From NCBI GenBank assembly GCA_977030845.1, contig OZ365117.1, positions 5,704,001 to 5,768,000 on the forward strand: 64,000 nt of DNA, given 5' to 3'. The DNA is from Fimbriosthenelais zetlandica. Taxonomy: Eukaryota. Shown here piece by piece: positions 94 through 63,872 of the stretch (the stretch's first letter is position 1; each line of letters starts with the position of its first letter). Position numbers and translations under genes: made by a program. Below the pieces are notes generated by a model. That model was not told the DNA's origin, did not search any database, and saw only the letters and a program-made list of their open reading frames with translations.

Positions 94-1622
94 GTGCTGG
101 ATCTTGTATCCCTTGTCCTGCCGGCTCACAATGTGCCAATAACTCCGCATCCCCTGTGCCCTGTGACACTGGCTATATCTCTGCTGACTTAAGTATAATC
201 TGCACCAAATGTCAAACAGGTAAGACAATGTTTCTCAACTACCCTACCCCTTTTGGGGAAGTGGATAGAGAAAGAATTTCTACTCAAAATAGTCACTTAT
301 TCCTATCAGACATAGAGTAATTATTCATGAGCCTATTGTAACTCAAAATCTGATTTTTCTGTAGATGAAATCACTCAGGGAACCCAAGATACATGCCATC
401 CATGCCCCGCAGGCAAATCCTGCTCTGATCCAACGTAAGTACCCAATCAAACCCGATGTTATAATTCATCTCTGAACATACACTTTCACAGGATGTTCAC
501 TCGTTTTCTTTTTCCAGGTTAACACCTGCGGATTGTGGGTTGGGGACGTACTCTCTATTAGGGAATGCCACATGTACTGAATGTCCAGCTGGCTTCTACT
601 GCTCCGTCTCCTCCATACAACCCTGCCCTTCTAGTAAGTTCTCTTTCTCAACTTCAAAAACAGAAAATCTGCCCCAAAACGATGAGGCCTAATCATTTCC
701 TCGATGCTTTTTCAGATCAATATTCTGCACCGGGATCGACGTATTGTAGTGATTGTCCACAGGGAATGAGCTGTGCTTCACCAAGCTCAGCCCCACAGTC
801 ATGCGGTCCTGGATACTACAGTGCCGCCGCAAGTAAGTTAACTAAACTTCCTTACTTTATCACTTTCAATACTTTATCACGTTCAATTACATAGTTCTTT
901 GTCCATATGAAGTACTTGGGGAAAACCGATGGACACAACAATTCTTTGCAAATGACGTTTGATTCTCTGGCAGATGGCTGAGAATGTCTGCAAAATGCTG
1001 CAAAAAGAAGTTGCGGACATACGTATTAGGAGCTTCTTTGCCAAGAGATATTTTGTATGTTAGTAAAGTAAGTTTTTCGGATGTTCTATATGTATTATTG
1101 TTTTGTTTCCCTAGGTATTACTTGTACTCAGTGTAGTGTGGGTTACTATTGCCCTGCCGGTAGACCTAGTGAGCTGCTTTGCCCGTCCGGTTTTACCTCA
1201 GCCCCAGGCGAAGACTCCTGCGTAGAATGCCCCGCGGGTCAGGAGTGCAGCAACCCGGCAAACCCGACCCACTGTCCTCCCGGAACCTTCTCCCTTGCTG
1301 GAGCAATTTCATGTAGAACTTGTTATCCTGGTAAGTGGTCCCGCTACCCTTGTCCTGACGGAAAATGATCATCGAAAGCTAACCTTATGAGAAATTGTAC
1401 TTAAGTTTATTTTAAACAATGTCTATGTTTTTGCAGGTCATTTTTGTGCTAATACTTCGAGTGAACCTCAGATGTGCCCATTAGGAACCTACAGTATGTT
1501 CACCACTGATACTGAATGTCAACTATGTCCAGCGGGACATCAATGTCCCTACCCGAACACTGACAAAACGCCGTGTCCTACCGGTAAGTGTCTTCATGTT
1601 GACAGAAAGCGAGTGCTTGAAT

Positions 1623-1674
<52 letters not shown>

Positions 1675-1834
1675 GGGAGAGACCTGAGCNNNNNNNNNNN
1701 NNNNNNNNNNNNNNNNNNNNNNNNNNNNNNNNNNNNNNNNNNNNNNNNNNNNNNNNNNNNNNNNNNNNNNNNNNNNNNNNNNNNNNNNNNNNNNNNNNNN
1801 NNNNNNNNNNNNNNNNNNNNNNNNNNNGAAAGAT

Positions 1835-1876
<42 letters not shown>

Positions 1877-10700: not shown

Positions 10701-13700
10701 AGGGTTTGAGACGATGGAGCACTGTCATCTGTGTACAGCTGGCTGGTACTGTGACGCGCCTGGTCTGGCCACACCTCGAGCTCCTTGTGATCCTGGTTAC
10801 ATCTGTTATGGCGGCTCATCAACATCAGCCCCGGTAGATGGTGAGACCGGCGAACTCTGCCCCGCCGGCGCCTACTGTCCTCTTGGTGAGTCGATTAACA
10901 CTAATTTCAGGGGCGGGTCCAGTATTTTTCCCAAATGGGGCGCCGGGTTAGGGTTAAGTTTAACCCTATCCCTATGGTTAGCGTTTTACCTCGGGTTAGG
11001 TTTAACACTTTGCTTAAAACCTAGGCTAATAAAAATAGGAGAGATTCCCCTGCGCCCCCCCCCCCCTAAATCCTCGCAGAATTTAGATCTGCAAATTTAG
11101 TTTTCCATGTTTTCTAAAATAATTTGAAATCTCTTTTATCAGGAGCTACATATCTTCGTCCATGCCCAATTGGGACCTACAGTAATACAACAGGAGCCTG
11201 GAACAAGGATGACTGTACGCCCTGTGACATTGGTTATTACTGTAATGGTATTTCTAATGGTGCGCCTACAGGTCTGTGCTATGGTGGATATTTCTGTAAC
11301 GAGACCGGCTCAGACACACCGAGAAAATACCCCGCATTACCAGGTATGGTTCACCGTCATTGCAATTATACATTTTTATTGTGAAAAAAACATAGCCTTT
11401 ATCGCAGTAATGTCACAAGCAAAATCACAGCAGTGGGGTGCTGGTTTTCCTAGCTAAACCATAGACAGTTCTTGCTAGGTGTCCCTTTCAATCTAGCCAG
11501 GGCAATGGTAAGGTTGGTGAGTAGAAAATCTATATCTTTGACTGTTTTTTATAGGGTACTATGCACCAAATGGATCCATATCTCAGATAGAGTGTGACGT
11601 GGGAACATACAACCCACTGTCACTGCAGTCAGAGTGTAGTGTTTGTGAACTCGGCTGGTACTGTGATGAGAAAGCTCTGGTTGACCGCAAGATCTGTCCC
11701 GCCGGAAAATACTGCGGTCATCCCAACGGTACCATCGTCCCTACTGACTGTCCACCCGGCACCTACAGCAATCTGTAAGTAACTTCTGTCTTTACCTTTT
11801 GGGACAGAAATAGGATTTGGGCAGGGTGCCAGCTCATTGAGGGAGTTAGCTCAGTAGGTTAGAGCACCAGCTCATTCAGGGAGTAAGCTCGGTAGGTGAG
11901 AGCACCAGCTCATTCAGGGAGTTAGCTCAGTAGGTGAGAGCACCAGCTCATTCAGGGACTTAGCTCAGTAGGTGAGAGCACCAGCTCATTCAGGGACTTA
12001 GCTCAGTAGGTGAGAGCACCAGCTCATTCAGGGAGTTAGCTCAGTAGGTGAGAGCACCAGCTCATTCAGGGACTTAGCTCAGTAGGTGAGAGCACCAGCT
12101 CATTCAGGGACTTAGCTCAGTAGGTGAGAGCACCAGCTCATTCAGGGTGTTAGCTGAGAGCACCAGCTCATTGAGGGAGTTAGCTCAGTAGGTGATAGCA
12201 CCAGCTCATTCAGGGTGTTAGCTGAGAGCACCAGCTCATTCAGGGTGTTAGCTGAGAGCACCAGCTCATTGAGGGACTTAGCTCAGTAGGTGAGAGCACC
12301 AGCTCATTCAGGGTGTTAGCTGAGAGCACCAGCTCATTCAGGGAGTTAGCTCAGTAGGTGAGAGCACCAGCTCATTGAGGGACTTAGCTCAGTAGGTGAG
12401 AGCACCAGCTCATTGAGGGAGTTAGCGCAGTAGGTGAGAGCACCAGCTCATATTAGCTTATACTCCACAAAACTCATGCTGAAGTCTGTATTTTATTCTT
12501 GTCAGTTCTTGATTCTTACTTTTAGAACCATGCTTTACGATGAGAATCAGTGCATCGATTGCCCGCCTGGATACTACTGTCAAAATCGCGGTGACACAAA
12601 ACCCACGGGCTTGTGTTTGGCAGGTCACATCTGCTACCAGCGGGCCCTCAATAACGATCCCGTCTACAACACCAACACATCTGATGGTAAAGTGGTCGTC
12701 ACGTATGGGGATCTGTGTCATGCGGGTCATTGGTGTCCTGAGGGCACCACATTCATGAGACCCTGCCCTGTCGGGACGTATCAACCTAACCGTCGTGGGA
12801 TTAGCGAGTCTGACTGTCTCTCCTGTGAGGCGGGCATGTACTGTAACACCACCGGTCTGGCTGCTGTCACAGGTGAGTAAAATTGGTTTTAATTGTTTTT
12901 GTTCTTGTTTTTTTTTCGTTTTTTATGAGATATCGCAGTAAATTACATTAAGTTTTTAGCTTGGTTGTTTCAGTGGTTTGTTTGGAGGACAATTTCTGTA
13001 TCATCTATATTGCTTTCACCAAAATCCGACCACCACCTTAAACTGTTCNNNNNNNNNNNNNNNNNNNNNNNNNNNNNNNNNNNNNNNNNNNNNNNNNNNN
13101 NNNNNNNNNNNNNNNNNNNNNNNNNNNNNNNNNNNNNNNNNNNNNNNNNNNNNNNNNNNNNNNNNNNNNNNNNNNNNNNNNNNNNNNNNNNNNNNNNNNN
13201 NNNNNNNNNNNNNNNGCCAGCTTCAGTCTGACTGATATACATATATACATACCTGTTTGTTAGGAGCCTGCTCAGCTGGGTATTACTGTAGCGGTCGTGC
13301 CTGGCAAGCTGAACCCAATGATAACGCCACGACTGGTGACATCTGTCCTCAGCATCACTTCTGTCCTGAGGGTGCCTCGGAACCACGGCCGTGCGCCATT
13401 GGGTAAGAACTCCATCTTGTTACAAACAAAAAACTAACTAACAAACTTAAACCTGGGATAATTTTGGGTGGATTCTGGGTTAAATGTTTTGACCAATTGT
13501 TCACTAAATGTTGCTCTTTCATGGCGGTTTTACTCCATTTCATTTCTTGTTTCAGATACATGGCTAACATGACCGGACTGAGTCAGTGTGAACTTTGCAC
13601 GGCAGGTTTTCTCTGTCTGCCAGGGGAAGCCCCAAGAATCTGTAAAACAGGTGAGCTGGAAATCCCATCTTTATCAAATTTAACGTTAAATCACCATTTA

Positions 13701-16700
13701 TTCTTTCTCAAATTTGTGTTCTATTCCCAAATAGTCCACTTGATATTGAAGGTATTTTTTTATTTCAGGTCATTATTGCCCGGCCAGTACTGTGAGCTTC
13801 CCCCGCACTCTGCCCGTACCCTGCCCAACCGGAACCTTTAATAACCTTACAGGTCTGAAACAGGAAAGTGACTGTACAACTTGTGCCCCGGGCAAATACT
13901 GCTTCTCTCCAGGTGAATTTATTTATTCAGTTGAGAATTATATACTATAATATATTGGACCCTACCTTGGTAGATTAGCTCCTTATGATGCATCTCCACC
14001 AATGTTTTTGTTGTACGTCTCTTTTTTCTCAAGGGTTATTCAGCGGTGGAGCTCTGATTTTGCTACAGTCGCAAGGATCGCAAGGGCATCCATGGGACCC
14101 TTGCGACTTGGCGGCGACATCTAAATATTCAGATATATGGTCACTAATAATGTATGTGCCATTCTAGCTAAGTCCAGAAGTCACAATGAAAAGACTTCCA
14201 AGATAGAGAGAGAAAGAGACAGTGAAAGTGACAAATCACTTGGCACTCGATTGAGCTCCACCATTGACAATTATTGGGTATATTTTCACAGGTTTGGTAG
14301 AACCAGAAGGCGACATTGCACCAGGATTCTGGTCCACCCAGGGCTCCACCACACCTGAACCAGCCAACGATGACAGTACAGTACTTGGTCAATGTCCGCG
14401 TGGATTCTACTGCCCCGCCGGCAGTGTCCTGCCCACCCCTTGCCCTGCGGGTACCTACGGCTTTGGTTGGATGTTGCCAGCAGTCAGTAGGTGCACTCAG
14501 TGTCCACAGGGTCAGTTCTGCCCCATGACCAATATGACCAGTGCTGGGGGTGACTGTGATGCGGGATATTACTGTTCATTGGGATCACCAGTACAAGCTC
14601 CCGTCAATGCTACCTATGGTGATATATGTCCACCTGGTAAGATACCAATTCATTACTTTTATCCTTCATTTGTTTGTTTGTTAAACATTTTATTGAGTGT
14701 TCAAATGGAATACCCATCAGGCATAAAGCCTGGTTTCCATGGGCATCCAGGTTTACATGTATATAGTCAAATTCAATACTAGTGGAAATAATTTTTTTGA
14801 TTTCATTGATTTCTTTGCAGTGGATAACCTGCTATGTTGTGCCTTTTTGACCCTTGGTGCACAATAACCCCTTTGCAGAAACTTATGATCGTATCTCATT
14901 TTTATGATCTTATCTCATTTTTATGATCTTATGAGATGAGACACTGTTAGGAGACTTATCCCTGCCATGGCTCCTGGTCCCACCCTAGTTCTGTCAACAG
15001 AGGGACAGGCTGTCCCCTGTCAACATTTCCAGATCCCAGCACCATCATCTATGATTATTCTTGAATCCACAGGTCACTATTGCCCCGTGAAAAGTGGTTA
15101 CCCGAGGCCCTGTGGGGAGGGCACGTTTCAGACTGAGGTCGGGCAATCTAACTGTGAGACCTGTACTGCTGGGAATTACTGCCCTGAAGGCTCAGCGTCA
15201 CCTGTTCCCTGCCCCGCTGGTTTCTTCTGTCTGGCCAATCAAGGACAGAACGACACCAACCCATGTCCTACGGGCAAGTACAGTAACATTACAGGACGGA
15301 GCTCAGTGTCAGAATGTCTCGACTGTCCCCCTGGGTGAGTACATGCCAAACATTAAATTGTCTTGATGCCTTTTTCAGAACAAGCAGTGTTAATTTCTTC
15401 GTCTTCAGTAGATTTTCCCTTCTGAAACCCTTGATATCCTGTCAAAGCTGTCACAATCACAATGCCTTATCCAACAGTGCAGGCCTGAGGTTTTGATGGA
15501 TTTTAGAATAGGCTGTCTTTATTTCTTCAGTGAATTTCCCTTCTGAAACCCTTTAGATCAATCATCCTAAGAGCTGCCTTCAGCCTTAAGACAAACATTA
15601 AGCCTTCAGTAAGCCTCAGAAGATAAGGATATAACTGTTAGGTTTTAAAAGACTACTTCTGACTTTCTGAATGACTCTCTCTTTCTCCAGGTTCTATTGC
15701 GGCACAACAGGCTTGTACGAACCCACCGGTCCCTGTAGCCCTGGTTGGTACTGCACTCTGGGTGCTCAGTTTACCACTCCCATCAACTCTAACCAGGGTG
15801 GGCGGTGTCAGCCGGGTAGTTTCTGCCCCGGTGGGAGTGCTGAACCTACTCCTTGTTCACCGGGTCAGTATTGTCAAGATGAAGGCCTGGAGGCGCCTAA
15901 TGGTAACTGCTCCAGGGGTTACTACTGCTGGCTGGGTGCGAGCTCAGCCTCCCCTCAAGGCGACGACACTGGTATGTTCTCTATACTTCTTAGCCATTTA
16001 CTACGTTCTCTTATAGGCTGATCCACAAGATGCAGGTTTAGTGGGGGCGCAGGTGGCGCCCCTCCCCATTCTTTGATGGCTAACGTAACCCTAAACCTAG
16101 GTTTTAAGCCTAGGGTTAATCCTAAGCCTAGGTTTAGTGTTGAAAGCAGAGTGACAGCAATGTCAGTCTCATCATTTCAAGCCTTTATAACCTGTGACAT
16201 TGCAAGAAAGGCAGTGCTCGGTCTCGGTGTATGGACCAACCACATTATTCTATTGGTAGGACTCCACTGCACCGCAAGTCACTTGCGGCCGTCTTGCGGC
16301 TGTACTTGTTCTATTTTTTCTGCGGGTGTTGATGTCCTTGCGGTGCTTGCGGTATTATATTATATTATATAATATATATTATTATATTGCGGTATGCATA
16401 TTGAAGTCCTGTGGTCCTCTGCACTAAAAGGGGTGCCTTGCACTATTCCTCTTTGAGATCCTGTCAATCTGATGGTCTTGCTTGGTGTATTCTCTTCATT
16501 ATAGGTAAAATATGCTATATGATACAATCCTATGTCCTCTGGCCTTCTGCCCTCACTGACACTTCTTTCTAGATCCTATATAAACTGATGTTCTTGCTTT
16601 GTTTATCTAGGTGGACCCTGCCCTATGGGTAGTTACTGTGATCCTGGCAGTACAAACGGCACAGGTTGCCCACCAGGGACCTTCCTCAACGTGACGGGAG

Positions 16701-55700: not shown

Positions 55701-58700
55701 TAGCTTACAGGAGTGCCTGGCCTGTCCCATAGACCACTTCAACCATATGACCGGTCAGCCTAAATGTTTCTCCTGTGGTGGTGAGGCCATTCAACCTAGG
55801 ACAGGTAATGATTTCTCAAGTTATAACAATCATTTAAGTTTAAACTGTCCAGGGACATTTTTCTGCAACTACAAGTCAGTTAAGAGAGTTCTAATCATGT
55901 CTGTCTTAACCCTTCCGTGCCGAACCACACATTTTGCTAGTTAATTTAAGCCTTTTAGCGACAATTCTAGGCATGAAAAGTGACTTAACATAAGTGCTGT
56001 TCATTCAAAAATGATTTAAAGTGTGTTAGATAAGGTGATTTGAAAGAAAAGAGAGGTTTCTGATTAAGATTTCTCTTTGACAGGACAAACCACGTGTCAG
56101 TGCAGTGGTTCAGGGCGTGACTTCCAGCCCAGTGACCGGAAGTGTCCTTGTGCTTCCGGCTTCATTAACATCGAGGGCAGGGCCTCGGACTGTGTCAAGA
56201 AGGTCCACGATCTTTGTGCAGTCGATGAGTCCCGCAATCAGCTTGGAGAGTGCTTGTCTCCAGCACAATGGGAAGAATACTGCAGCACCAAGGTGTGTGA
56301 CACTTATAAAGGTTACAATCGTGATCTTGGACTGTGTCTGTGCGGTGTAGATGACCTTGAAGCATTCTGTGACCCTGAATGTCGAGCTAAATCTAAGAGA
56401 GTTGTCACCTTACACTGTCCAAGTCTACCTCTGGTTCCCTTCATGAGGGTTTCTGACTCCACTGGGGCTATAAAGGTGAGTTGGCACTTGAATAATGTTT
56501 GTACGAATATGAATCTTTGAATTTAGCTCCTTTATAAAACGTTTCAAAAAGAATACTAGGTGATGATCTACTTTTTGAATTGCAGTCAGAGATACCTATT
56601 GACAACCTTGGTAAGATTACCCATCTGAGAACCCTCCCACTTTGCACTGACCTCGATGCTGCCCCGTCAAGCGTACCATTCATGGAGATGACTGACGAAG
56701 GTTTTCTCGGAGTTTACAATCCTGATCCAGACCAGGTGCTCGGTCTTCTGGAGGATAACGCTAAGGGGGTCTACGACCGAAACATCAGCCGAGCTGGAGA
56801 AACGGGGTACACCTTCAGACGTCGCTTGTTGGCCACCTCAACCAACCCAGGCTCCAAATTCAAAGGCATTGCTAACCCGACCATCTGCATCCTTCATGCC
56901 ACACTGATGTTCTTCGTCGTCAGCAATGATTTCTACCCGATATATGACAGGTAGGTTGGATTGAACTACACATGTATTTTGCTCAACTGAATACTTTATA
57001 CTTTGCCCTCAGTTTCCTCACCTGACTTGATCTTTTCTCAACAGAGACAACCTGTACAACACCAATGATAAGTTTGATTATGGAGGCTTCCGAACGCTCG
57101 CTGAAGCCCATGCTCTGCAGTCCACACAGTCCACATTATTTGCTTATCAGTTCAATGATCCAGGAGCCTATGCCTTCTATGCCAGCAATGATGTTAACAA
57201 GAAAATAGTAAGTAAAGAAATACTGATTCTTCACAAATAGTTTAGTTTTCGATGGTCGCAAAGATGAATTGCCAATGTTTCTCTCCCAGTTTCCCTTATC
57301 CTGGGCCCACACAGAGGCGATTTGCCCATGCGATAGTAAACATATTTCTAATCACAACCAATGCTTGGAATTTTAACAGTCCTTTAAACCTAGCTAAGGC
57401 TAACCACTGACAAAATTATAAGCATTGGGTGTGACTAGAAATGTACTATCGCTCTGCATCGCTTGGACAAATCGCCTCTGTATGGGCCCGGCATTAGTAC
57501 AACTGATAATTCCATTGTACTAACTAACTGGCTTTTCTTGTGTGTAGTATGTTCGTGTCATGGCACCTAACGCTCAGTGTACTGAAGACGGTCCGTTCTT
57601 CCCCACCACACCTCGCTACGTCATCCAGAACGGTATGGCTATATCCCAGGACATCCTCAAGTCACCTGACTGGCTGGTCATACTCATTCTACTCGCCGCC
57701 GTCTTCCTTGTCATGGTCATCATAGTCCTGGCTCTGGTAGGTCACTTTAATTCACTCCTTTAAAGGGGCACTCTCACGGAGGCACAATGAGCACCAGGAA
57801 TTAAGGCCTGCTTCATTTTGAGAGACGTCATATCATCCGCAGATTTAAGTACATTCTTAAATCATAGAACGGTCGTACTTAGTTTTCAGTACTAGCTGCA
57901 GACACAAAATGATTTTAAAATTCATACTCAACTACATACAAGGACAGTAGTTTCTTCATTTAACCATTCTCTTCCTTAAACTCTCAGGTCTTGTTCAGGA
58001 AATATGGCTGGAACAAGGCCATGTTTATATCGCCGCACTACCGCTTGCTGAGTCGGAAGTACAACTTTGATGACTACGCCAGCAAGGGTTCAGCTGTACA
58101 CTCTGTTAAGAAATTCAACCGAGCTATTACAGCCGATGGAAATGGTGATGCATCTCAACCCCTGGCTCTCATGGGTAGGTCCAGAATGATTCTTTATTCT
58201 CTATCAAAGCTTAGTCTCAAAGGTCGCAACCATATCTAAAAATTTTGATATGGTTGCAAAGTTCTGTGTGGCTCCAGTGGCGTTAGTCCCAGACTCAGTG
58301 GCGCTGTACCATTAGCATCCATGGAAGATGGATGAACTTAAACTTATTTTTGAAGCCATGTTTCAATCTTTCCTTTCCCTTTGATGTTTCTGCAGCAGCA
58401 GGAGATGGGGAAGATGACATCAAGGCGGATGAATTCTGGGATTACACTCGCCAGGTGGATCTAGAGGCCTTCAGCAGTAACACCTTGTATGACATCCTCT
58501 CATCACAAGCCAGAGACATCACCAAAGGTCTGGGCAAGCAGAAAGAAGAGGTAAGTGTTTTTATGGCTAGAAATGCACTGAAGTTCTCCCGCCACATCTG
58601 ATCATCCCCTAAATTGACTGTGACTGGCTGGTGCCATTTTCCTTCTTATATTTAAAACACGATATAGAGACAACTTTTGGTCATTCCCCATGGTTGATGC

Positions 58701-61700
58701 TTTGGGGTAGGTGCACTTTTACAAAGCACAGGGTGAAATCTATTTGGTCCCTTTCTGTGAGGCGACATGGTGCTATATCCAAATTCATTCATTCATATAT
58801 ACATTCATTCATTCTTATATTCATTCATATATTCATTCATCCATCCATCCATCCATCCATCCATTCGTTCACTCAGTCATTCATTCATCAATAATTCATT
58901 CATCCATAATTCATTCATCCATTCCTTTCATTCATTCAGTCATTCATTCTCTTTCTCACAGGTGAAGTCGCTTTATCAGAAGATAGCTAATCAGAGCACT
59001 TCACTGAAGGGTCTGTGGGCGGCCAAGTTGAACCTGAGTGGCCGTGGTGAGATGGCATCCCGGGAGGACATGGCCCGGTACGACCAGAAGATGAGCGAGC
59101 TCGACACTGAGCTGGAGAGGAGACAGAAACTGGGTCTGAAATTCCAGGAGGTGCAAGAGAGGATTCTCAAACTGCAGGATGAGGATGAGACTTCACGCAG
59201 AGAACATCAGGTCAGTCTATGTTTCCTATCTTGATTTGGTCGTTTCTTGTCCCTCCTCTCTTCATTTGGTCGTTTCTTGTCCCTGCCTTGTGTCTCCCTT
59301 GTGGAGAGAGGCCAACCATGTCTCCCACTGTCTATGGTGAGAGGCATGTGAAAAGCCAGCCATGTCTCCATTCAATTGGAATGAAATAAAATTTTGGTTA
59401 TTTTTCAAAATTTTTTAAACCTGTCCAAGAAATCGAAATTTCTTCCATTTCCCAACTTTATCAATACCAATCAAAAATCACTTGCACCTACTCTAGAACA
59501 CCCCACAGACTGCCTGAGATGACTTAAAGTCAATTGGAATGAAATAAAATTTTGGTGATTTTTCAAACTTTTTTAAACCTGTCCAAGAAATCGAAATTTC
59601 TTCCATTTCCCAACTTTATCAATACCAATCAAAAATCACTTGCACCTACTCTAGAACACCCCACAGACTGCCTGAGACGATTTAAAGTCAATTGGAACGA
59701 AATAAAATTTTGGTGATTTTTCAAACTTTTTTACAGGTCCCGACCTGTTCAAGAAATCGAAATTTCTTCCATTTCCCAACTTTATCAATACCAATCAAAA
59801 ATCACTTGCACCTACTCTAGAACACCCCACAGACTGCCTGAGATGATTTAAAGTCAATTGGAATGAAATAAAATTTTGGTGATTTTTCAAACCTTTTTAC
59901 AGGTCCCGCCCGACCTGTTCAAGAAATCGAAATTTCATCCATTTCCCAACTTTATCAATACCAATCAAAAATCACTTGCACCTACTCTAGAACACCCCAC
60001 ATACTGCCTGAGATGATTTAAAGTCAATTGGAATGAAATAAAATTTTGCTTATTTTTCAAACTTTTTTACAGGTCCCGACCTGTTCAAGAAATAGAAATT
60101 TCTTCCATTTCCCAACTTTATCAATACCAATCAAAAATCACTTTCACCTACTCTAGAACACCCCACAGACTGCCTGAGATGATTTAAAGTCAACTGGAAA
60201 GAAATAAAATTTTACTGATTTTTCAAACTTTTTTACAGGTCCCGACCTGTCCAAGAAATCGAAATTTCTTCCATTTCCCAACTTTATCAATACCAATCAA
60301 AAATCACTTGCACCTACTCTAGAACACCCCACAGACTGCCTGAGACGATTTAAAGTCGATTGGAATGAAATAAAATTTTGCTTATTTTTCAAACTTTTTT
60401 ACAGGTCCCGACCTGTTCAAGATATCGAAATTTCTTCCATTTCCCAACTTTATCAATATCAATTAAAAATCACTTGCACCTACTCTAGAACACCCCACAG
60501 ACTGCCTGAGACGATTTAAAGTCGATTGGAATGAAATAAAATTTTGCTTATTTTTCAAACTTTTTTACAGGTCCCGACCTGTTCAAGATATCTAAATTTC
60601 TTCCATTTCCCAACTTTATCAATATCAATCAAAAATCACTTGCACCTACTCTAGAACACCCCACAGACTGCCTGAGATGATTTAAAGTCAACTGGAATGA
60701 AATAAAATTTTGCTTATTTTTCAAACTTTTTTAGAGGTCCCGACCTGTTCAAGAAATGGACATTTCTTCCATTTCCCAACTTTATCAATACCAATCAAAA
60801 ATCACTTTCACCTACTCTAGAACACCCCACATACTGCCTGAGATGATTTAAAGTCAATTGGAATGAAATAAAATTTTGGTGATTTTTCAAACTTTTTTAT
60901 AGGTCCCGACCTGTTCAAGATATCTAAATTTCTTCCATTTCCCAACTTTATCAATACCAATCAAAAATCACTTGCACCTATTCTAGAACACCCCACAGAC
61001 TGCCTGAGACGATTTAAAGTCGATTGGAATGAAATAAAATTTTGCTTATTTTTCAAACTTTTTTACAGGTCCCGACCTGTTCAAGATATCGAAATGTCTT
61101 CCATTTCCCAACTTTATCAATATCAATTAAAAATCACTTGCACCTACTCTAGAACACCCCACAGACTGCCTGAGACGATTTAAAGTCGATTGGAATGAAA
61201 TAAAATTTTGCTTATTTTTCAAACTTTTTTACAGGTCCCGACCTGTTCAAGATATCTAAATTTCTTCCATTTCCCAACTTTATCAATACCAATCAAAAAT
61301 CACTTGCACCTACTCTAGAACACCCCACAGACTGCCTGAGATGACTTAAAGTCAATTGGAATGAAATAAAATTTTGGTGATTTTTCAAACTTTTTTAAAC
61401 CTGTCCAAGAAATTGAAATTTCTTCCATTTCCCAACTTTATCAATACCAATCAAAAATCACTTGCACCTACTCTAGAACACCCCACAGACTGCCTGAGAC
61501 GATTTAAAGTCAATTGGAACGAAATAAAATTTTACTGATTTTTCAAACTTTTTTACAGGTCCCGACCTGTTCAAGAAATCGAAATTTCTTCCATTTCCCA
61601 ACTTCATCAATACCAATCAAAAATCACTTGCACCTACTCTAGAACACCCCACATACTGCCTGAGATGATTTAAAGTCAATTGGAATGAAATAAAATTTTG

Positions 61701-63872
61701 GTTATTTTTCAAACTTTCTAAAAAAGACTTGGTGATTTGGAATAGCAAATTTAGATAGCTGAATGGAACTATTCACTCACTCACTCACTTACTCACAATA
61801 TATTGCAGGTCTCCTATGTAAGTTAACATTGACTTACTCTCCACCATTATCTTACAGGTATCTTACGACTCCTCACACCGTGAGTGTAGCCGTATTGTTA
61901 AGGAGCACCAGGCCAAGCTTTACCGTGGTCAGTTACAGTCAGACACTGGACACTTTGATGGCGACCAGCACCACATGGTCATCACCCGGGCTGGAGTCCT
62001 ACTCCAGAGGATGTCCGGAGACTTGACCACAGAGTGTGAGAGACTCGGGGCCTGGGGTGTACTGGGTCAAGGTACAGGTGGTCAACTGATTGACCCAGGC
62101 ACTGGTCAACCTGCTGAGAGGGAACAACTAGTGGGTAAGTTGGATTCCCATTTAAATCATTTTTAAATTATTATTTCACATGTCACTGTGCGCCCTGGTT
62201 TTATGTAGATTTCTATGTGAGAGACGAAGCATTCAAAGTCTAAACCCACCAATACTACCACTGTACTGACTACCTAAAAAATATTATTTTTCACATTAAA
62301 TCAACCCCCTAATCTAGGGTGGTCCTGCGTAATAATGAGAGGAATTTTGATCTTTAAGTAGATTTCCTGTTGGATGGGGAGTATCATAGGCAACCCCTTG
62401 GATATACCCTTGAATATTATGCTCCAGATAGCCTGAGACCATATTGAAAATGTATCATTAAAATGTCCTCTTGTTCACAGGATCAGATCTAGGTATGAAA
62501 TCTCCTAACCTCGTCCACGTGGACAATGTGACAGGCCTTATAGTGCCCAACTCAGACATGAAGATGTTGGTGAACAGTGGGGGGATTTTAGATGTCCCTG
62601 ACAACTTCTGTCTCCACCCACAGACTGGTCACCTGCTACCTATAGATGGCAATATCTCCTACGATCCACTAGCTTCCAAACTAGTCTTCACCATCGATAC
62701 AGCCATTGGTAAGACTCTAAACTTCATACACTTATTATTATGGGTTAGCTATACTGGGGGTTCTTTTGCCTTGAGAGTGTTGCGATTTTGTTGCTGTTGT
62801 GACTGATATTTCTATGGTTGTACCCGCCATACCACTCGTAAATAGATCATTGCATAAGCACCCATCGCAAATAGCAATCCCCTGCTTGGTCAGTTGTTGG
62901 CAAATGCAGAAAAACATCCAGTGGAGCGACCCAAAATTAACAGGAGTTTGGTACTAAACTTACAACATGCATTCACAATTTTAACATTTTCTTTTGATCC
63001 TTTTTTCAGGTGAAGCATGTAGGACTGAGGAAGCCCTTATTCCATTCATCAAGTACCCAGTCCACCCTGACACTGGATCACCCATCCCCACCAAGTTCTC
63101 CCCACCCAGACATAAACGCGACCTCTCCTTGGGATCCAACATGGCCGACCCTCAGACTGGGCTGCACGTCCCTGTCGTTGCCGTGACCATCGACCCTCAG
63201 TCTGGTGCCATCTTGCTTGTCGGTGGGACGCACATTGACCCTGTGACGACACTTCCGGTTGCCATAGATATCGGTGGACTGATGCTTGACCCCGAGACCA
63301 ACACGCCCGTACCCATCCTTTCAGTGGACATCGACCCTGATACAGGTTGGTTAAATCTTTGAATGAACAAGTCTTTTTGACATGGAACTTCAAACTACTT
63401 CAAAATCTCATATTCAACAGAATCCAAACAGTTCTGGAGATTTTGTAGGCTATTTACCAAATTGTAACCGCTTAGCCAGACAGAAAGTTCTATAGACTAC
63501 CATACACAATTTCGATCAGTTTAATTCAGCTTACTTCAGTTTTTGGGACTATTTGATTATGTCAAACACTGTAGTTCTCTCATCCCATTATTCAAATATA
63601 ACTGAACTGTTAAAACGCTCTTCTTACTCCAGGATTAGCAGTACCAGTAGGTGGAACCCGTGCCACTGAACAAGGCCCAGTGCCACTGGTACCTGGTGAG
63701 ACGTTCATGGAGATCATGAGCGGGAAGTCAGTGCGGGTGGCGGGAAGCTACAGTCATGATGGTCAGGTGCTGCCGTCTGCTGGATCATATCAGACCATGC
63801 TCGACTCTGTCTGTATGGCGTGTGAGGCCAGGGTTCTAGATGCCTTCAGACAGTATGTCGATGCCTTATCAG
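94..63872 (+). CDS. Giant multi-exon gene, partial at both ends: Cys-rich repeat (GCC2-GCC3 / Ephrin_rec_like / TNFR-like) single-pass membrane protein; 118 exons, ~7,950 aa in window
   Basis: Exons traced by AG/GT boundaries with continuous phase (window opens in a phase-1 intron): 94-219,365-434,518-633,716-832,1115-1330,1437-1583,2037-2208,2621-2763,3640-3901,4160-4344,4704-4940,5366-5473,5895-6089,6378-6584,6852-6989,7646-7816,8270-8419,8563-8685,8853-8994,9100-9239,9459-9676,10145-10337,10703-10885,11143-11343,11555-11774,12526-12872,13264-13402,13556-13650,13769-13912,14292-14636,15073-15334,15691-15971,16611-16850,17240-17401,17664-17832,18157-18335,18559-18714,18997-19226,19551-19788,20243-20476,20854-21021,21351-21638,21962-22201,25075-25236,25625-25792,26036-26269,26714-26896,27246-27518,27712-27858,28174-28449,28909-29160,29499-29801,30042-30290,30556-30777,30972-31234,31499-31776,31873-31931,32194-32427,32736-32888,33188-33391,33791-33958,34312-34594,35129-35379,35600-35737,35859-36048,36250-36431,36790-37014,37349-37492,37581-37777,37862-38030,38311-38472,38828-39160,39452-39673,39930-40040,40177-40413,40704-40829,41126-41423,41733-41883,42248-42422,42765-42887,43177-43393,43812-43990,44168-44347,44448-44620,44840-45017,45282-45419,45571-45726,46012-46260,46375-46527,46810-47004,47175-47560,47926-48042,48403-48757,48947-49105,49361-49592,49856-50055,50487-50657,50941-51066,51459-51659,51926-52183,52642-52854,53441-53584,53963-54320,54713-54864,55036-55170,55261-55506,55625-55804,56084-56475,56586-56950,57045-57207,57548-57736,57988-58174,58396-58550,58962-59210,61858-62134,62481-62708,63010-63345,63633-63872. 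Summed length ~23,874 nt; I saw no in-frame stop. The + strand ORF-track entries with CPxGxYC are fragments of these exons. Confidence 0.93.
1624..1873. repeat. (GA)n microsatellite flanking assembly gap 1690-1827
   Basis: Pure GA runs on both sides of the N run. Confidence 0.95.
3048..3165. mobile_element. 118-bp near-palindromic element (MITE-like hairpin)
   Basis: TAGACCCTTTGTTGGTT...AACCAACAAAGGGTCTA and inner CCCGTCTAGTGCGTA...TACGCACTAGACGGG are inverted; the ends fit a TA (or AAT) target duplication. Confidence 0.7.
4388..4615. mobile_element. MITE family TAAAGGGGCACTATCACG (full copy; deleted copy 52912-53015; 3'-truncated copy 57761-57905)
   Basis: TIRs TAAAGGGGTACTATCACG / CGTGATAGCGCCCCTTTA; shared internal TTCATTTTGA..GTCATA(C/T)CATCC(G/A)CAGATTTAAG in all three copies. 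Confidence 0.8.
7060..7500. repeat. Degenerate ~20-21 bp minisatellite CATCCCTTGG-x-AGGGGTGGC
   Basis: About 20 imperfect copies of the CATCCCTT(G/A)G core in intron 15. Confidence 0.85.
7817..8018 (+). repeat. 30-34 bp tandem repeat in which each unit starts with a GTAAGT splice donor
   Basis: Unit GTAAGTTTGTCTCATTTCT(GCT/TCT/ACT)nATTGTCTG; GTAAGT at 7817, 7850, 7880, 7913, 7946, 7979 and 8013. Confidence 0.95.
9697..9935. repeat. 17-bp TATCCAAACTGAATCTG tandem plus local duplication
   Basis: About 6 copies at 9697-9810; ATGTCAAATCATGTGAACAGGC...GGACAACTGAAAAATCTTC occurs twice (~9808 and ~9885). Confidence 0.8.
10908..11092. mobile_element. Dispersed repeat with degenerate TTAGGG core and GGGGGCGCAG/CCCCCTAAATCC end; related inverted copy at ~16030-16145
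   Basis: GCTTAAAACCTAGG (~11015) is the reverse complement of CCTAGGTTTTAAGC (~16097); the CTGCGCCCCC..CTAAA end matches TTTAGTGGGGGCGCAG. Confidence 0.55.
11828..12451 (+). repeat. Tandem array of 38-bp (13x) and 30-bp (4x) units resembling the 5' half (D-arm / A box) of a tRNA or tRNA-SINE head
   Basis: Unit CACCAGCTCATTCAGGGAGTTAGCTCAGTAGGTGAGAG; the first copy reads GGGAGTTAGCTCAGTAGGTTAGAGCACC. Confidence 0.9.
13049..13215. other. Assembly gap inside intron 26
   Basis: N run; the flanking exons join in phase as GLAAVTG-ACSAGYYC. Confidence 0.95.
15073..49592 (+). CDS. Exons 31-95: ~680-695 aa Cys-rich super-repeat, about seven copies
   Basis: Marker (F/Y)Q(D/N)xxxxxxCKxC recurs in exons at 17240, 25075, 30042, 35129, 39452, 44448/44840 and 48947, with spliced spacings of 688, 689, 685, 680, 691 and 682 aa. 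Marker GTGxxWxxCPxG(T/S) and its variants recurs six times with 677-694 aa spacing. Confidence 0.85.
19322..19435 (+). repeat. Dispersed 44-bp minisatellite CATGTAAAAGGCCAGCCATGTCTCCCACTGTATGTGGTGAGAGG (also 1-22, 42510-42715, 42960-43035, 59300-59370)
   Basis: Unit starts at 42566, 42610, 42654 and 42698 give a 44-bp period; five loci, all in the same orientation. Confidence 0.85.
21040..21091. repeat. (ATTC)n microsatellite
   Basis: Direct reading. Confidence 0.95.
21103..21305. mobile_element. MITE family GGGACTCCACTGCTGCGA, copy 1
   Basis: Long imperfect TIRs (GGACTCCACTGCTGCGACAGTTCTTGCGACACTACAGCGACAAAGGT / ACCTTTGTCGCTGTAGTGTCGCAAGCACTGTCGTAGCAGTAGAGTCT); central AAGTGTCTAAGGCCTTAAGG; TA at both ends. 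Confidence 0.85.
22235..24724 (+). repeat. Satellite array 1: 15 x 166-bp monomer in intron 43
   Basis: GACCTGTAAAAAAG starts at 22235, 22401, 22567, 22733, 22903, 23069, 23235, 23401, 23567, 23733, 23899, 24065, 24231, 24398 and 24564. Confidence 0.97.
24773..24988. mobile_element. MITE family GGGACTCCACTGCTGCGA, copy 2
   Basis: TIRs AAGCCGGGACTCCACTGCTGCGATTTTGCTTGC / GCAAGCAAAATCGCAGCAGTGGAGTCCCGGCTT; lies 50 bp after satellite array 1. Confidence 0.9.
28491..28801. repeat. 23-bp tandem repeat TTCTAGCAGAGTTTAGGGCCCGA, ~13 copies
   Basis: Direct reading in intron 50. Confidence 0.95.
29282..29313. repeat. (GAAT)n microsatellite
   Basis: Direct reading. Confidence 0.9.
31263..31341. mobile_element. 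MITE family TAGCCTGAACCCACTGAGCTACGATCT, 79-bp internally deleted copy
   Basis: TIRs TAGCCTGAATCCACTGACCTACGATCT / AGATCGTAGCTCAGTGGGTTCAGGCTA; solo ends at 6614-6643 and 44681-44695. Confidence 0.85.
33459..33674. mobile_element. MITE family TAGCCTGAACCCACTGAGCTACGATCT, 216-bp copy (related reverse copy 53660-53871)
   Basis: Same TIRs; internal TTCATTCCACATACTTTT matches the reverse complement of AAAAGTATGTGGAATGAA at ~53709. Confidence 0.85.
39258..39331. repeat. Imperfect (TC)n microsatellite
   Basis: Direct reading. Confidence 0.85.
39722..39853 (+). mobile_element. 5'-truncated SINE-like fragment (second, longer copy 52190-52372)
   Basis: Both copies share CATGATA(G/C)CTCAGTGAGG(C/A)AGCACTAT(A/T)AAAGAGCATAGGGCT..CTGTCACAA(A/G)TAGGCAC..TCATGATA....TGAAAAATTGTTGAAAGTGAC(G/A)TTAA; no TIRs; the 3' end recalls lophotrochozoan MetaSINE/RUDI-type tails (from memory, unverified). 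Confidence 0.65.
40415..40619. mobile_element. MITE family GGGACTCCACTGCTGCGA, copy 3 (reverse orientation), inserted in a splice donor; left-arm fragment at 33992-34054
   Basis: Exon ends 40413; the intron begins G-TA-AGGCCGGGACTCCACTG; the right end is CAGTGGAGGACAGCCT-TA at 40618-40619. Confidence 0.85.
42081..42192. repeat. 42-bp tandem repeat, ~2.7 copies
   Basis: CAGGCTTTGGGGTCTCAGAGGCTTGAAATCTTCCCCTTGGAA repeated. Confidence 0.9.
44348..44447 (+). other. GC-AG intron (100 nt)
   Basis: AAAG|GCAAGT donor restores CEK-G-YYC; the nearest GT (44352) gives a frameshift and stop. Confidence 0.85.
46711..46791. repeat. (ACTC)n microsatellite (shorter run at ~61773-61795)
   Basis: Direct reading; ends ~18 nt before the acceptor at 46809. 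Confidence 0.95.
50076..50338. mobile_element. MITE family TAGGG(T/A)AGCTCCACT; related degenerate copies ~32975-33130, ~38090-38240, ~54445-54645, ~62754-62935 (reverse)
   Basis: TIRs TAGGGAAGCTCCACT / AGTGGAGCTACCCTA; shared AGTGTAACTG....A.GGG.TTGCTATTTG core. Confidence 0.7.
51190..51398. mobile_element. MITE-like element GACTCCACTG...CAGTGGAGTC; reverse copy at ~18760-18950, related fragment ~16256-16420
   Basis: TTCCATTAGAAATTCAAGGGCTACAAGGACCGCAA (~51262) is the reverse complement of TTGCGGTCCTTGCAGCCCTTGAATTTCGAATGGAA (~18863). Confidence 0.7.
53173..53382. mobile_element. MITE with TIR TAAGCCTGGAATACACT
   Basis: TAAGCCTGGAATACACT / AGTGTATTCCAGGCTTTA; contains the CCTAGGTAAGGCTAACC motif also seen at ~57390, ~48220 and ~25338. 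Confidence 0.7.
56084..57670 (+). CDS. Exons 108-111: non-repetitive juxtamembrane ectodomain (distinct Cys cluster, RRRLL motif, NLYNTNDKFDYGGFR...FAYQFNDPGAYAFY segment)
   Basis: Translation of 56084-56475, 56586-56950, 57045-57207 and 57548-57670; the CPxG repeat pattern is lost here. Confidence 0.85.
57302..57489. mobile_element. MITE with TIR GGGCCCA(C/T)ACAGAGGCGATTTG; collapsed copy at ~5545-5582
   Basis: TGGGCCCACACAGAGGCGATTTGCCCATGCGAT / ATCGCTTGGACAAATCGCCTCTGTATGGGCCC. Confidence 0.7.
57671..57996 (+). CDS. Single transmembrane helix WLVILILLAAVFLVMVIIVLAL|VLF followed by RKYGW
   Basis: 25 consecutive hydrophobic residues across exons 57548-57736 and 57988-; basic residues directly C-terminal (positive-inside rule) imply type I topology. 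Confidence 0.9.
57997..63872 (+). CDS. Exons 112-118: cytoplasmic tail (>550 aa, continues past window) with coiled coil and DPxTG-type repeats
   Basis: Coiled-coil-like REDMARYDQKMSELDTELERRQKLGLKFQEVQERILKLQDEDETSRREHQ (58962-59210); DPGTG, DNVTG, HPQTG, HPDTG, DPQTG, DPQSG, DPVTT, DPETN, DPDTG in 61858-63872. The last exon ends in a phase-1 donor with no stop. Confidence 0.85.
58784..58948. repeat. Compound (TTCA)n/(CATC)n microsatellite forming the pyrimidine-rich tract before acceptor 58961
   Basis: Direct reading. Confidence 0.9.
59373..61720 (-). repeat. Satellite array 2: 14 full + 1 partial monomers of the same 166-bp satellite, reverse orientation, in intron 114
   Basis: CAATTGG-type starts at 59373, 59531, 59689, 59855, 60025, 60191, 60357, 60523, 60689, 60855, 61021, 61187, 61353, 61511 and 61677; three monomers are 158 bp and one is 170 bp; reverse complement of array 1. 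Confidence 0.97.

What the first reader, a model, noticed from the sequence alone, without database searches (positions are those of the whole stretch)
94..63872. Giant (>7,900 aa, still incomplete) Cys-repeat single-pass receptor/adhesin of an apparently uncharacterised animal family
Seen: 118 exons splice into one frame. They encode ~7,000 aa of CPxGxYCP-type repeats with many NxS/T sequons, a unique juxtamembrane domain, one TM helix and a >550 aa tail. Known: GCC2-GCC3/Ephrin_rec_like repeats occur in SCUBE, SVEP1 and ELAPOR, in algal mastigoneme protein MST1, and in the alveolate cysteine repeat modular proteins (CRMPs) needed for rhoptry/extrusome discharge. None of the named animal proteins has this size or architecture. 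I recall unnamed metazoan models of this type (e.g. zebrafish si:ch211-286b4.4) but cannot verify homology. Inference: a very long disulfide-stiffened glycosylated rod coupled to a cytoplasmic scaffold, e.g. a ciliary/microvillar tether, mechanosensor, gamete adhesin or secretion trigger.
Basis: partly seen in the sequence, partly recalled or inferred. Interest (0 to 1): 0.85.

Follow-up and report, generated by a model that had tools for sequence, protein, structure and literature searches.

The report
Giant conserved cysteine-repeat surface protein gene
Almost the whole window is one real, very large animal gene for a membrane protein with a huge sugar-coated, cysteine-rich outer rod; its relatives run from single-celled eukaryotes to mammals, and none has been studied.

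Summary
My own exon chaining gives 118 GT-AG exons (94-63872, + strand), one open frame and 7,951 aa. The protein has about 7,020 aa of Ephrin_rec_like-type Cys modules, a 350-aa unique juxtamembrane part, one TM helix and a 557-aa tail still open at the window's end.

Both assembly gaps lie in introns. Collinear alignment with two complete homologues shows that no coding sequence is missing there.

The family is uncharacterised, but it is not animal-only. The juxtamembrane part, TM helix and tail align end to end with:
- predicted proteins of Lingula, Owenia and oysters (about 52% identity) and Trichoplax (40%);
- vertebrate 'si:dkey-103g5.4' / mouse-type 'Gm32742' proteins (about 36%; these have almost no repeats);
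- an ichthyosporean (30%) and a metamonad (25%).

Position by position, about 4,800 aa of the ectodomain keeps register with a sea-slug protein to within 12 residues. Trichoplax differs by exactly three 685-aa super-repeats.

In AlphaFold models of the Lingula orthologue, the membrane-proximal domain is cupredoxin-like without copper ligands. The tail is a helical bundle carrying a beta-hairpin array with no structural match.

The function is untested. I favour a fixed-length surface tether coupled to a cortical scaffold.

The parts
94..63872 (+). The part of the gene inside the window: 118 coding exons, 23,856 nt, 7,951 aa, open at both ends
   Evidence: Exon chaining and manual checks; strand and shuffle controls; collinearity with homologues.
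94..55804 (+). Exons 1-107: ectodomain of about 7,020 aa, roughly 130 six-Cys modules of CPxGxYC / Ephrin_rec_like type, densely N-glycosylated
   Evidence: 9.7% Cys, 169 sequons and regular Cys spacings of 6/3/12/10/17. PF07699 scores 29.3, 28.0 and 24.4 bits against a cut-off of 23.1 on exons 30044-30289, 25077-25235 and 12527-12871, with many exons just below the cut-off.
14636..49501 (+). Array of about 6.5 super-repeats of about 685 aa each (aa about 1,750-6,200)
   Evidence: Self-BLAST offsets of 685/1370/2050/2740/3430 at 44-55% identity. Each unit is closer to its positional counterpart in molluscs (55-63%) than to its sister units (44-46%). Trichoplax has exactly three units fewer.
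56084..57670 (+). Exons 108-111 (up to the TM helix): conserved juxtamembrane ecto-module of about 350 aa, made of a Cys-rich cap, a beta part and a membrane-proximal cupredoxin-like sandwich
   Evidence: No Pfam or PDB sequence match. 59-sequence alignment A1. AF2 model of the Lingula orthologue: pLDDT 87.4, pTM 0.86. Foldseek and VIA-align both return only cupredoxins: plastocyanin TM 0.56-0.58, Z 5-6. No conserved His in A1.
57671..57736 (+). The single transmembrane helix (aa 7373-7394), ending exactly at the donor of exon 111
   Evidence: It is the only hydrophobic peak in the model (KD 3.69). Donor ctg|GTAGGT and the next exon starting VLFRKYGW. Same position in all homologues.
57988..58493 (+). 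Exons 112-113 (first part): cytoplasmic linker, predicted disordered, with conserved short motifs (FRKYGW, YRxL, YNFDDY-SKGS, EFWDY..QVDLEAF)
   Evidence: Alignment A2 consensus and near-invariant columns. AF2 residues 1-91 have pLDDT below 50.
58494..62062 (+). Exons 113 (end), 114 and 115 (most): three long helices of a helical bundle. The intron between exons 114 and 115 holds a satellite array.
   Evidence: AF2 of the Lingula orthologue: helices 96-144, 155-226 and 238-266, pLDDT 74-97. Only generic helical-bundle matches, Z 12 or less.
62098..63872 (+). Exons 115 (end) to 118: beta-hairpin repeat array built on (I/L)DPxTG-type units, then the start of the helix that closes the bundle. The coding sequence runs off the window.
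   Evidence: AF2 residues 278-534, pLDDT mostly above 90, about 25 short strands. No significant match in PDB, Swiss-Prot AFDB or ESM Atlas. Conserved from vertebrates to Chilomastix.
1690..1827 (.). Assembly gap 1, inside the intron between exons 6 and 7, flanked on both sides by (AG)n
   Evidence: No indel at junction aa 264 against Trichoplax or Chromosphaera.
13049..13215 (.). Assembly gap 2, inside the intron between exons 26 and 27
   Evidence: No indel at junction aa 1509 against Trichoplax or Chromosphaera.

Best explanation
What it is (well supported). The window holds most of one gene for a type I membrane protein that is probably about 10,000 aa in full. It is the orthologue of an unnamed, unstudied family: Trichoplax TRIADDRAFT_51343, Lingula LOC106159584, teleost si:dkey-103g5.4 and rodent Gm32742. 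The family's constant core has four parts:
1. a juxtamembrane ecto-module ending in a copper-less cupredoxin-like sandwich;
2. one TM helix;
3. a cytoplasmic linker with short conserved motifs;
4. a helical bundle carrying a beta-hairpin array.
In relatives this core is followed by a charged coiled coil of about 1,200 aa and a C-terminal domain with an invariant H-x-x-x-H motif.

How it most likely works (inferred). About 130 disulfide-locked, N-glycosylated modules form a stiff rod of fixed length, roughly 0.3-0.5 micrometre if extended. The rod stands on the cupredoxin-like base. The tail ties this rod to a cortical or cytoskeletal scaffold. The protein would then act as a surface spacer or tether, for adhesion or force transmission, in which rod length and the identity of each module matter. 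Vertebrates keep only the base and the tail.
For: Shown.
- One intact gene.
- Orthology of the core: a single 950-aa HSP with Lingula, Owenia and Saccostrea (51-53%), Trichoplax (40%), paddlefish (38%), Chromosphaera (30%, E 6e-114) and Chilomastix (25%, E 8e-52). The gene tree follows vertebrate phylogeny.
- Complete homologues have a signal peptide, one TM helix and a tail of 2,000-2,400 aa.
- Strict register of the ectodomain: drift of 12 aa or less over about 4,800 aa against Elysia, and 10 aa or less over 4,050 aa against Saccostrea.
- Each super-repeat is closer to its positional orthologue than to its paralogues. Copy number changes only by whole 685-aa units.
- Topology from the Cys and sequon asymmetry.
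- Folds.

Inferred. Rod stiffness and length follow from general knowledge of TNFR-type Cys modules. Cortical anchoring follows from the coiled-coil-rich tail of relatives.
Against: - There are no RNA, protein, localisation or phenotype data for any member.
- Most homologues are computational gene models.
- The AF2 models are of the Lingula orthologue, not of this protein.
- Vertebrates dispense with the rod, so the conserved function may lie wholly in the base and tail and need no tether.
- The conserved YRxL in the linker could instead point to a trafficking receptor.
- Strict module-by-module conservation could reflect many specific binding sites or a compact higher-order fold rather than a simple rod.
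Confidence: 0.55

Rival explanations
1. Ciliary or flagellar surface filament. The rod is a membrane-anchored hair or tether on cilia or microvilli, analogous in use to mastigonemes, and the tail docks it to the axonemal or cortical cytoskeleton.
For: All lineages found so far have flagellated or ciliated cells: Chilomastix, Chromosphaera, Trichoplax and the bilaterians. The tail is rich in coiled coil.
Against: There are no localisation data. The taxon sampling was limited by the search tool, so no correlation with cilia could be tested. PDB sequence searches with the repeats returned nothing at all. Mammals keep the gene without the rod.
Confidence: 0.15
2. Cargo or ligand receptor that cycles through endosomes, ELAPOR-like in use. 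The many modules bind ligands and the tail directs sorting.
For: Sub-threshold matches to the ELAPOR1 TNFR-like model (28.9 bits against a cut-off of 33.2). A majority-conserved YRxL (a YxxPhi-type motif) lies just inside the membrane. Topology is type I.
Against: No MRH or other ELAPOR domain was found. A 2,000-aa structured tail with a long coiled coil is atypical for a sorting receptor. A register of 12 aa or less over 4,800 aa is hard to explain by generic ligand binding.
Confidence: 0.12
3. Contact-sensing trigger of regulated secretion, like the alveolate CRMP complex.
For: It shares the Ephrin_rec_like/GCC2_GCC3 module type, large size and an ancient eukaryotic distribution. CRMPs are needed for rhoptry or mucocyst discharge (PMC9670195).
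Against: CRMPs have multiple C-terminal TM domains and Kringle, MAR or EGFR-type domains (PMC9670195). This protein has one TM helix, none of those domains, and a different, much longer tail.
Confidence: 0.06
4. Artefact: several genes, a decaying repeat array or an assembly collapse or expansion read as one gene.
For: There are no RNA data. Two assembly gaps are present. Repeats invite mis-assembly. One donor (exon 19) is ambiguous.
Against: There is no stop or frame break in 23.9 kb, and all sites are GT-AG. Collinearity with independent gene models from four phyla and with complete 7,000-7,700-aa proteins holds to within about a dozen residues, and it runs through both gaps.
Confidence: 0.05

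Closest known systems
Unnamed orthologue group: Trichoplax TRIADDRAFT_51343 (7,662 aa), Lingula LOC106159584, Owenia and Saccostrea models, teleost/paddlefish 'si:dkey-103g5.4', rodent 'predicted gene 32742', Chromosphaera Nk52_evm8s371
   Same: The juxtamembrane module, single TM helix and cytoplasmic core are collinear over about 950 aa at 25-53% identity. In the invertebrate and protist members the giant Cys-repeat ectodomain is also collinear, unit by unit.
   Different: Vertebrate members have only about 90 aa of Cys modules ahead of the juxtamembrane module. Trichoplax has three super-repeats fewer and Chromosphaera about four fewer. None has a described function.
Alveolate cysteine repeat modular proteins (CRMPs)
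   Same: Large surface proteins with the same Pfam type of Cys module. The ectodomain faces out and the C-terminus is cytosolic (PMC9670195).
   Different: CRMPs have multiple C-terminal TM domains and Kringle, MAR or EGFR-type domains. Here there is one TM helix, a different base and a 2,000-aa structured tail.
ELAPOR1/2, SCUBE and SVEP1 (animal proteins with Ephrin_rec_like / TNFR-like modules)
   Same: The same module type. ELAPOR is also type I. There are weak hits to PF23091 and PF07699.
   Different: Those proteins carry a handful of modules among other domains. They are ten or more times smaller and share none of the juxtamembrane or tail core.
Cupredoxins (plastocyanin, pseudoazurin, amicyanin) and the ephrin ectodomain
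   Same: The membrane-proximal domain of the Lingula model has the same beta-sandwich topology: TM 0.56-0.58 by target and Z 5-6, with ephrins at Z 3.6-3.7.
   Different: No conserved His/Cys/His/Met copper site and no sequence similarity. This is a fold resemblance only.

Membership tests
Unnamed si:dkey-103g5.4 / Gm32742 / TRIADDRAFT_51343 orthologue group (defined here by alignment) | Conserved juxtamembrane ecto-module of about 340 aa with a fixed Cys pattern | tested here: met
   Exons 108-111 align at 50-52% (Lingula, Owenia) and 30-39% (vertebrates) over at least 85% of the module. Invariant Cys, Gly and Pro columns in A1.
Unnamed si:dkey-103g5.4 / Gm32742 / TRIADDRAFT_51343 orthologue group | Exactly one TM helix directly after that module | tested here: met
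   Single hydrophobic peak at aa 7373-7394, at the same place in the homologues.
Unnamed si:dkey-103g5.4 / Gm32742 / TRIADDRAFT_51343 orthologue group | Collinear cytoplasmic core: motif-bearing linker, helical bundle, beta-hairpin array | tested here: met
   Model aa 7395-7951 aligns over at least 85% of its length with 90 homologues at 33-53% identity.
Unnamed si:dkey-103g5.4 / Gm32742 / TRIADDRAFT_51343 orthologue group | Distal tail (charged coiled coil and C-terminal H-x-x-x-H domain) and N-terminal signal peptide | not testable with these tools
   Both lie outside the window. By collinearity, about 210-270 aa are missing at the N-terminus and about 1,500 aa or more at the C-terminus.
Pfam PF07699 Ephrin_rec_like (GCC2_GCC3) repeats | Score at or above the curated gathering cut-off (23.1 bits) | tested here: met
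   29.3, 28.0 and 24.4 bits on three single exons, and 16-23 bits on at least ten others. PF07699 is precomputed on homologues P0097 and P0148-P0151.
Alveolate CRMPs | Multiple C-terminal transmembrane domains | tested here: not met
   One TM helix only. The CRMP architecture is taken from PMC9670195.
Alveolate CRMPs | Sequence homology outside the Cys modules | not tested
ELAPOR1/2 | ELAPOR-specific TNFR-like model PF23091 above its cut-off, with ELAPOR domain order and a short tail | tested here: not met
   Best score 28.9 bits against a cut-off of 33.2. No other ELAPOR domain was found. The tail exceeds 550 aa.
Type 1 copper cupredoxins | Cupredoxin beta-sandwich fold | tested here: inconclusive
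   Two aligners return only cupredoxins, but at modest scores: Foldseek E 3.5e-4 to 2e-2 with TM by target 0.56-0.58, and VIA Z 5-6. The model is of the Lingula orthologue.
Type 1 copper cupredoxins | His, Cys, His, Met copper ligands | tested here: not met
   No His is among the invariant or 90%-conserved columns of A1.

The most novel reading that the evidence does not exclude
This is a pre-metazoan, possibly very early eukaryotic, 'molecular ruler'. A membrane-anchored rod of thousands of residues has a length that changes only in quanta of one 685-aa super-repeat, and it has stayed in register to within about a dozen residues across phyla. It is coupled through a structurally new cytoplasmic beta-hairpin domain to a giant coiled-coil scaffold. 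It would set a fixed sub-micrometre extracellular distance at a cell surface, cilium or contact. Vertebrates kept only its signalling or scaffolding stub.
Probability: 0.25. Interest if true: 0.85.

Novelty: new variant of a known kind. Interest (0 to 1): 0.66.

Why it matters
Giant repeat proteins are usually written off as fast-evolving, copy-number-variable adhesins. Here every module of a rod of more than 7,000 aa has its own conserved identity, and the array keeps register across phyla. That argues for a precise structural role.

The family is old (a unicellular holozoan and a metamonad as well as animals) and has mammalian members. Its cytoplasmic domain has no structural relative, and I found no paper about it. 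It is therefore a well-defined 'dark' gene family that can be tested directly, for example in zebrafish, mouse, oyster or Trichoplax.

The work also shows that gene models for this locus type are routinely truncated or fused to neighbouring genes in public annotations.

Tried and rejected
Searches that found nothing useful.
- Pfam on all unique exons and on the tails of homologues gave nothing.
- PDB sequence searches with single exons, a 1,100-aa repeat stretch and profiles A1 and A2 gave nothing.
- Foldseek (PDB, Swiss-Prot AFDB), VIA-align and ESM Atlas on the tail model gave only generic helical bundles and sub-significant propeller, YD-shell or CROP-like hits.
- Rfam found no RNA family.
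- Literature on dkey-103g5.4, Gm32742, TRIADDRAFT_51343 and LOC ids yielded only one gene-list mention.
- Looking up the best ENA fragment's contig returned no DNA.

Leads checked and dropped.
- Ankyrin repeats in turtle models are N-terminal gene-model fusions with a neighbouring gene, not part of the family.
- A plakin-repeat reading of the DPxTG units has no Pfam support.
- My first recollection that 'Nk52' ids belong to a nucleariid was wrong. PMC6981761 assigns them to Chromosphaera perkinsii.

Tests that proved weak or inconclusive.
- The junction-spanning BLAST test was shown weak by decoys and was replaced by offset collinearity.
- The source species could not be identified. In a tree of the core region it sits with slowly evolving invertebrates (Lingula, Owenia, bivalves), not with vertebrates.
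Full report

The window has 44% G+C and two N runs, at 1690-1827 and 13049-13215. Stop-free, Cys-rich segments with CPxGxYC motifs fill the + strand from one end to the other. I wrote a splice-aware dynamic programme that used codon log-odds, donor and acceptor weight matrices, and a penalty for changing frame between exons. It returned one chain of 116 exons starting at 94, and the frame-break option was never used.

Three tail exons scored poorly under a codon model trained on Cys repeats, so I fixed them by hand:
- the TM exon 57548-57736 (donor ctg|GTAGGT);
- exon 57988-58174;
- exon 62481-62708.

The result is 118 exons, all GT..AG, 23,856 nt and 7,951 aa without a stop. Median exon length is 188 nt and median intron length 289 nt. 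Sixty-seven of the exons are phase 1-1.

The same programme finds 15 exons (score 52) on the opposite strand and 5 exons (score 10) on triplet-shuffled sequence, against 117 exons (score 3146) on the + strand. The model was trained on the + strand, but the contrast is too large for that to explain it.

**Architecture**

- The ectodomain holds 766 Cys and 169 NxS/T sequons. The 557 residues after the only hydrophobic helix (aa 7373-7394) hold 6 Cys and 4 sequons, and basic residues follow the helix. This is a clear type I topology.
- Cys spacings are regular at 6/3/12/10/17.
- Single exons reach the Pfam gathering score for Ephrin_rec_like (PF07699): 29.3, 28.0 and 24.4 bits against a cut-off of 23.1. 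Many more exons fall just below it.
- Residues about 1,750-6,200 form about 6.5 copies of a 685-aa super-repeat.

**The gaps**

Gap 1 is embedded in an (AG)n microsatellite within the intron between exons 6 and 7. Gap 2 lies in the AT-rich intron between exons 26 and 27. No coding-like sequence abuts either gap, and the phase is 1 on both sides of each.

Local alignments with the complete Trichoplax and Chromosphaera proteins run through both junctions (aa 264 and aa 1509) with no indel of 5 residues or more at the junction. So no exon is hidden in either gap, as far as homology can tell.

**What the gene is**

A phmmer search of the juxtamembrane exon 56586-56948 against 1.84 billion representatives gave 42 hits. 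Most were exon-sized fragments. The rest were vertebrate 'uncharacterized protein LOC...' entries.

Searching with the tail of a turtle hit gave a vertebrate-wide group:
- teleosts and paddlefish, named si:dkey-103g5.4;
- frogs, reptiles, birds, coelacanth, lungfish and a ray;
- bats, rodents, goat and fox, with one rodent entry named 'predicted gene 32742';
- invertebrate models from Owenia, Lingula, Dreissena and Plakobranchus.

Stepping up in query length found Saccostrea (6,488 aa), Elysia (5,766 aa), Trichoplax TRIADDRAFT_51343 (7,662 aa), an 'Nk52_evm' protein (7,076 aa) and a Chilomastix cuspidata protein (5,791 aa). PMC6981761 assigns Nk52_evm identifiers to the ichthyosporean Chromosphaera perkinsii.

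My spliced model aa 7001-7951 aligns in one HSP with each of these:

| Species | Identity |
|---|---|
| Lingula | 52.6% |
| Owenia | 52.2% |
| Saccostrea | 51.1% |
| Trichoplax | 40.4% |
| Paddlefish | 38.5% |
| Chromosphaera | 29.6% (E 6e-114) |
| Chilomastix | 25.4% (E 8e-52) |

This validates the last 14 exons. It also shows that the core of juxtamembrane module, TM helix and tail is much older than animals.

The complete homologues (Trichoplax, Chromosphaera, vertebrates) start with a signal-peptide-like segment and have one TM helix. Their tails are about 1,300 aa in vertebrates and 2,000-2,400 aa elsewhere. Vertebrate ectodomains are only about 470 aa, with about 90 aa of Cys modules ahead of the juxtamembrane module. 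A maximum-likelihood tree of the core follows vertebrate phylogeny and places this window with the slowly evolving invertebrates. The source species remains unidentified.

**The unexpected result: a giant repeat array in strict register**

Sliding 300-aa windows of the model against each homologue give near-constant offsets:
- -2237 to -2225 against Elysia over model aa 2251-7050, at 49-63% identity;
- -3268 to -3275 against Saccostrea over aa 3901-7951;
- +216 to +273 against Trichoplax over aa 1-3750, and -1789 to -1806 over aa 6000-7951.

The net difference from Trichoplax is 2,056 aa, which is three 685-aa units. Chromosphaera has about four units fewer.

Each 685-aa stretch is closer to its positional counterpart in molluscs and annelids (54-63%) than to its sister units in the same protein (44-46%). 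The array is therefore not a homogenising, copy-number-variable repeat. It is a fixed series of individually conserved modules, and its length has changed only in whole super-repeats.

This is also the best validation of my exon model. Two independent predictions agree to within about a dozen residues over about 4,800 aa.

By the same collinearity the window lacks only about 210-270 N-terminal residues. At the other end it lacks roughly 1,500 residues or more of tail.

**Folds**

I could not submit a spliced sequence for structure prediction, so I folded the Lingula orthologue (50-53% identical) with deep alignments A1 (59 sequences) and A2 (65 sequences).

The juxtamembrane module folds confidently (pLDDT 87.4, pTM 0.86). 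Its membrane-proximal part matches only cupredoxins with two different aligners. Foldseek gives plastocyanin at TM by target 0.56-0.58. VIA-align gives Z 5-6 for pseudoazurin, amicyanin and plastocyanin, and ephrins at Z 3.6-3.7. No His is conserved in A1, so a type 1 copper site is excluded.

The tail model (pLDDT 81, pTM 0.70) has three parts:
- a disordered 90-residue linker with conserved motifs, including a majority YRxL;
- three long helices plus a closing helix, forming a bundle;
- a 260-residue array of short beta-hairpins built on (I/L)DPxTG units, inserted in that bundle, with pLDDT mostly above 90.

The helices match only generic bundles, with Z 12 or less and so below the tool's stated noise level for helical folds. 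The beta array has no significant match in PDB, Swiss-Prot AFDB or the ESM Atlas. No Pfam family or PDB sequence relative exists for any of these parts.

**Beyond the window**

This is context only and does not describe the window. In Owenia and other relatives the tail continues with:
- a second hairpin segment;
- a charged, coiled-coil-like stretch of about 1,200 aa;
- a globular C-terminal domain of about 200 aa, conserved as far as Chromosphaera, with an invariant H-[C/S/A/T]-x-x-H motif.

An ESM Atlas feature search on that domain gave leads to zincin-like families (SprT-like, M48, DUF3684). These leads are unverified.

**How it probably works**

Shown: it is a type I surface protein with a very long disulfide-rich, glycosylated ectodomain, a conserved base, one TM helix, and a large, structured, conserved tail.

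Inferred: the modules form a stiff rod. By analogy with TNFR-type Cys modules it would measure a few tenths of a micrometre; this is my estimate, not a measurement. The tail would tie the rod to a cortical scaffold.

The register conservation argues that length and module identity are functional. I therefore favour a fixed-length tether or spacer for adhesion or force transmission.

I give about 0.9 to the identity claim and about 0.35 to the mechanism. Rivals are a ciliary surface filament, an endocytic receptor (YRxL motif, weak ELAPOR-like hits), a CRMP-like secretion trigger, and an artefact. The CRMP reading fails on architecture, because CRMPs have multiple TM domains (PMC9670195). The artefact reading is made unlikely by collinearity.

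**Novelty**

Orthologues are in public databases, but only as 'uncharacterized' predictions. These predictions are often truncated, or fused to neighbouring genes and so named after them (NFKBIZ-like, LAYN, teneurin-4 or ABC transporter). I found no study of the family.

The module type is known. The following appear to be new:
- the conserved base and tail;
- the structurally unmatched cytoplasmic domain;
- the distribution outside animals;
- the strict register of the rod.

**Limits**

- There are no RNA data.
- Most homologues are computational gene models. I take the Chilomastix entry to be transcript-derived only from its identifier style.
- The structure models are of an orthologue, not of this protein.
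- The donor of exon 19 is ambiguous by 19 aa.

Noticed in passing
window 22235-24724 and 59372-61717: Two arrays of the same 166-bp satellite, each about 2.4 kb (about 15 and 14 copies, 94-95% matches), fill two introns of the gene 35 kb apart. From their consensus units they lie in opposite orientation.
   Followed up: partly
Trichoplax and Chromosphaera align across this junction (aa 869) without any indel. The first donor therefore gives the conserved product, and the extra donors would add 11-aa units unseen in relatives.
   Followed up: partly
window 8563-8685 (exon 19): There are two in-phase donors. The strong one is at 8686 (ctg|GTAAGT). A weaker one at 8629 (ttg|GTGTGA) would remove 19 aa and would restore the usual 17-residue Cys spacing and the length seen in Trichoplax and Chromosphaera. 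This could be alternative 5' splice-site use or a lineage-specific loop.
   Followed up: partly
window 19323-19439 and 42554-42715; a similar stretch near 59300-59386: A 44-bp tandem unit (GCCATGTCTCCCA...GGCATGTAAAAGGCCA) recurs in at least two introns, and by its translation pattern also near 59300. It looks like a dispersed minisatellite or small mobile element.
   Followed up: no
window 11829-12451, 7098-7492, 28490-28802: Further intronic minisatellites: a 38-bp unit x17, a 21-bp unit x15 and a 23-bp unit x14.
   Followed up: no
outside the window; Owenia homologue P0097 residues about 3790-4010 and counterparts: The family's C-terminal domain is conserved from vertebrates to Chromosphaera and has an invariant H-[C/S/A/T]-x-x-H motif. 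ESM Atlas feature hits point to zincin-like folds lacking the catalytic Glu (SprT-like, M48, DUF3684). This is a lead only.
   Followed up: partly
public homologues P0035, P0038, P0056, P0059, P0060, P0072, P0100, P0131, P0145: Many annotated vertebrate models of this gene carry a neighbouring gene's domains (ankyrin repeats) or take their name from one (NF-kappa-B inhibitor zeta, LAYN, teneurin-4, ABC transporter G). This suggests gene-model fusions, so database names for this family are misleading.
   Followed up: partly
Saccostrea homologue P0146 versus model aa 2401-3900: The offset to the oyster protein jumps from -2511 to -3268, about 760 aa, between two collinear blocks. The simplest reading is a missing piece in that gene model or assembly rather than a real deletion.
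   Followed up: no
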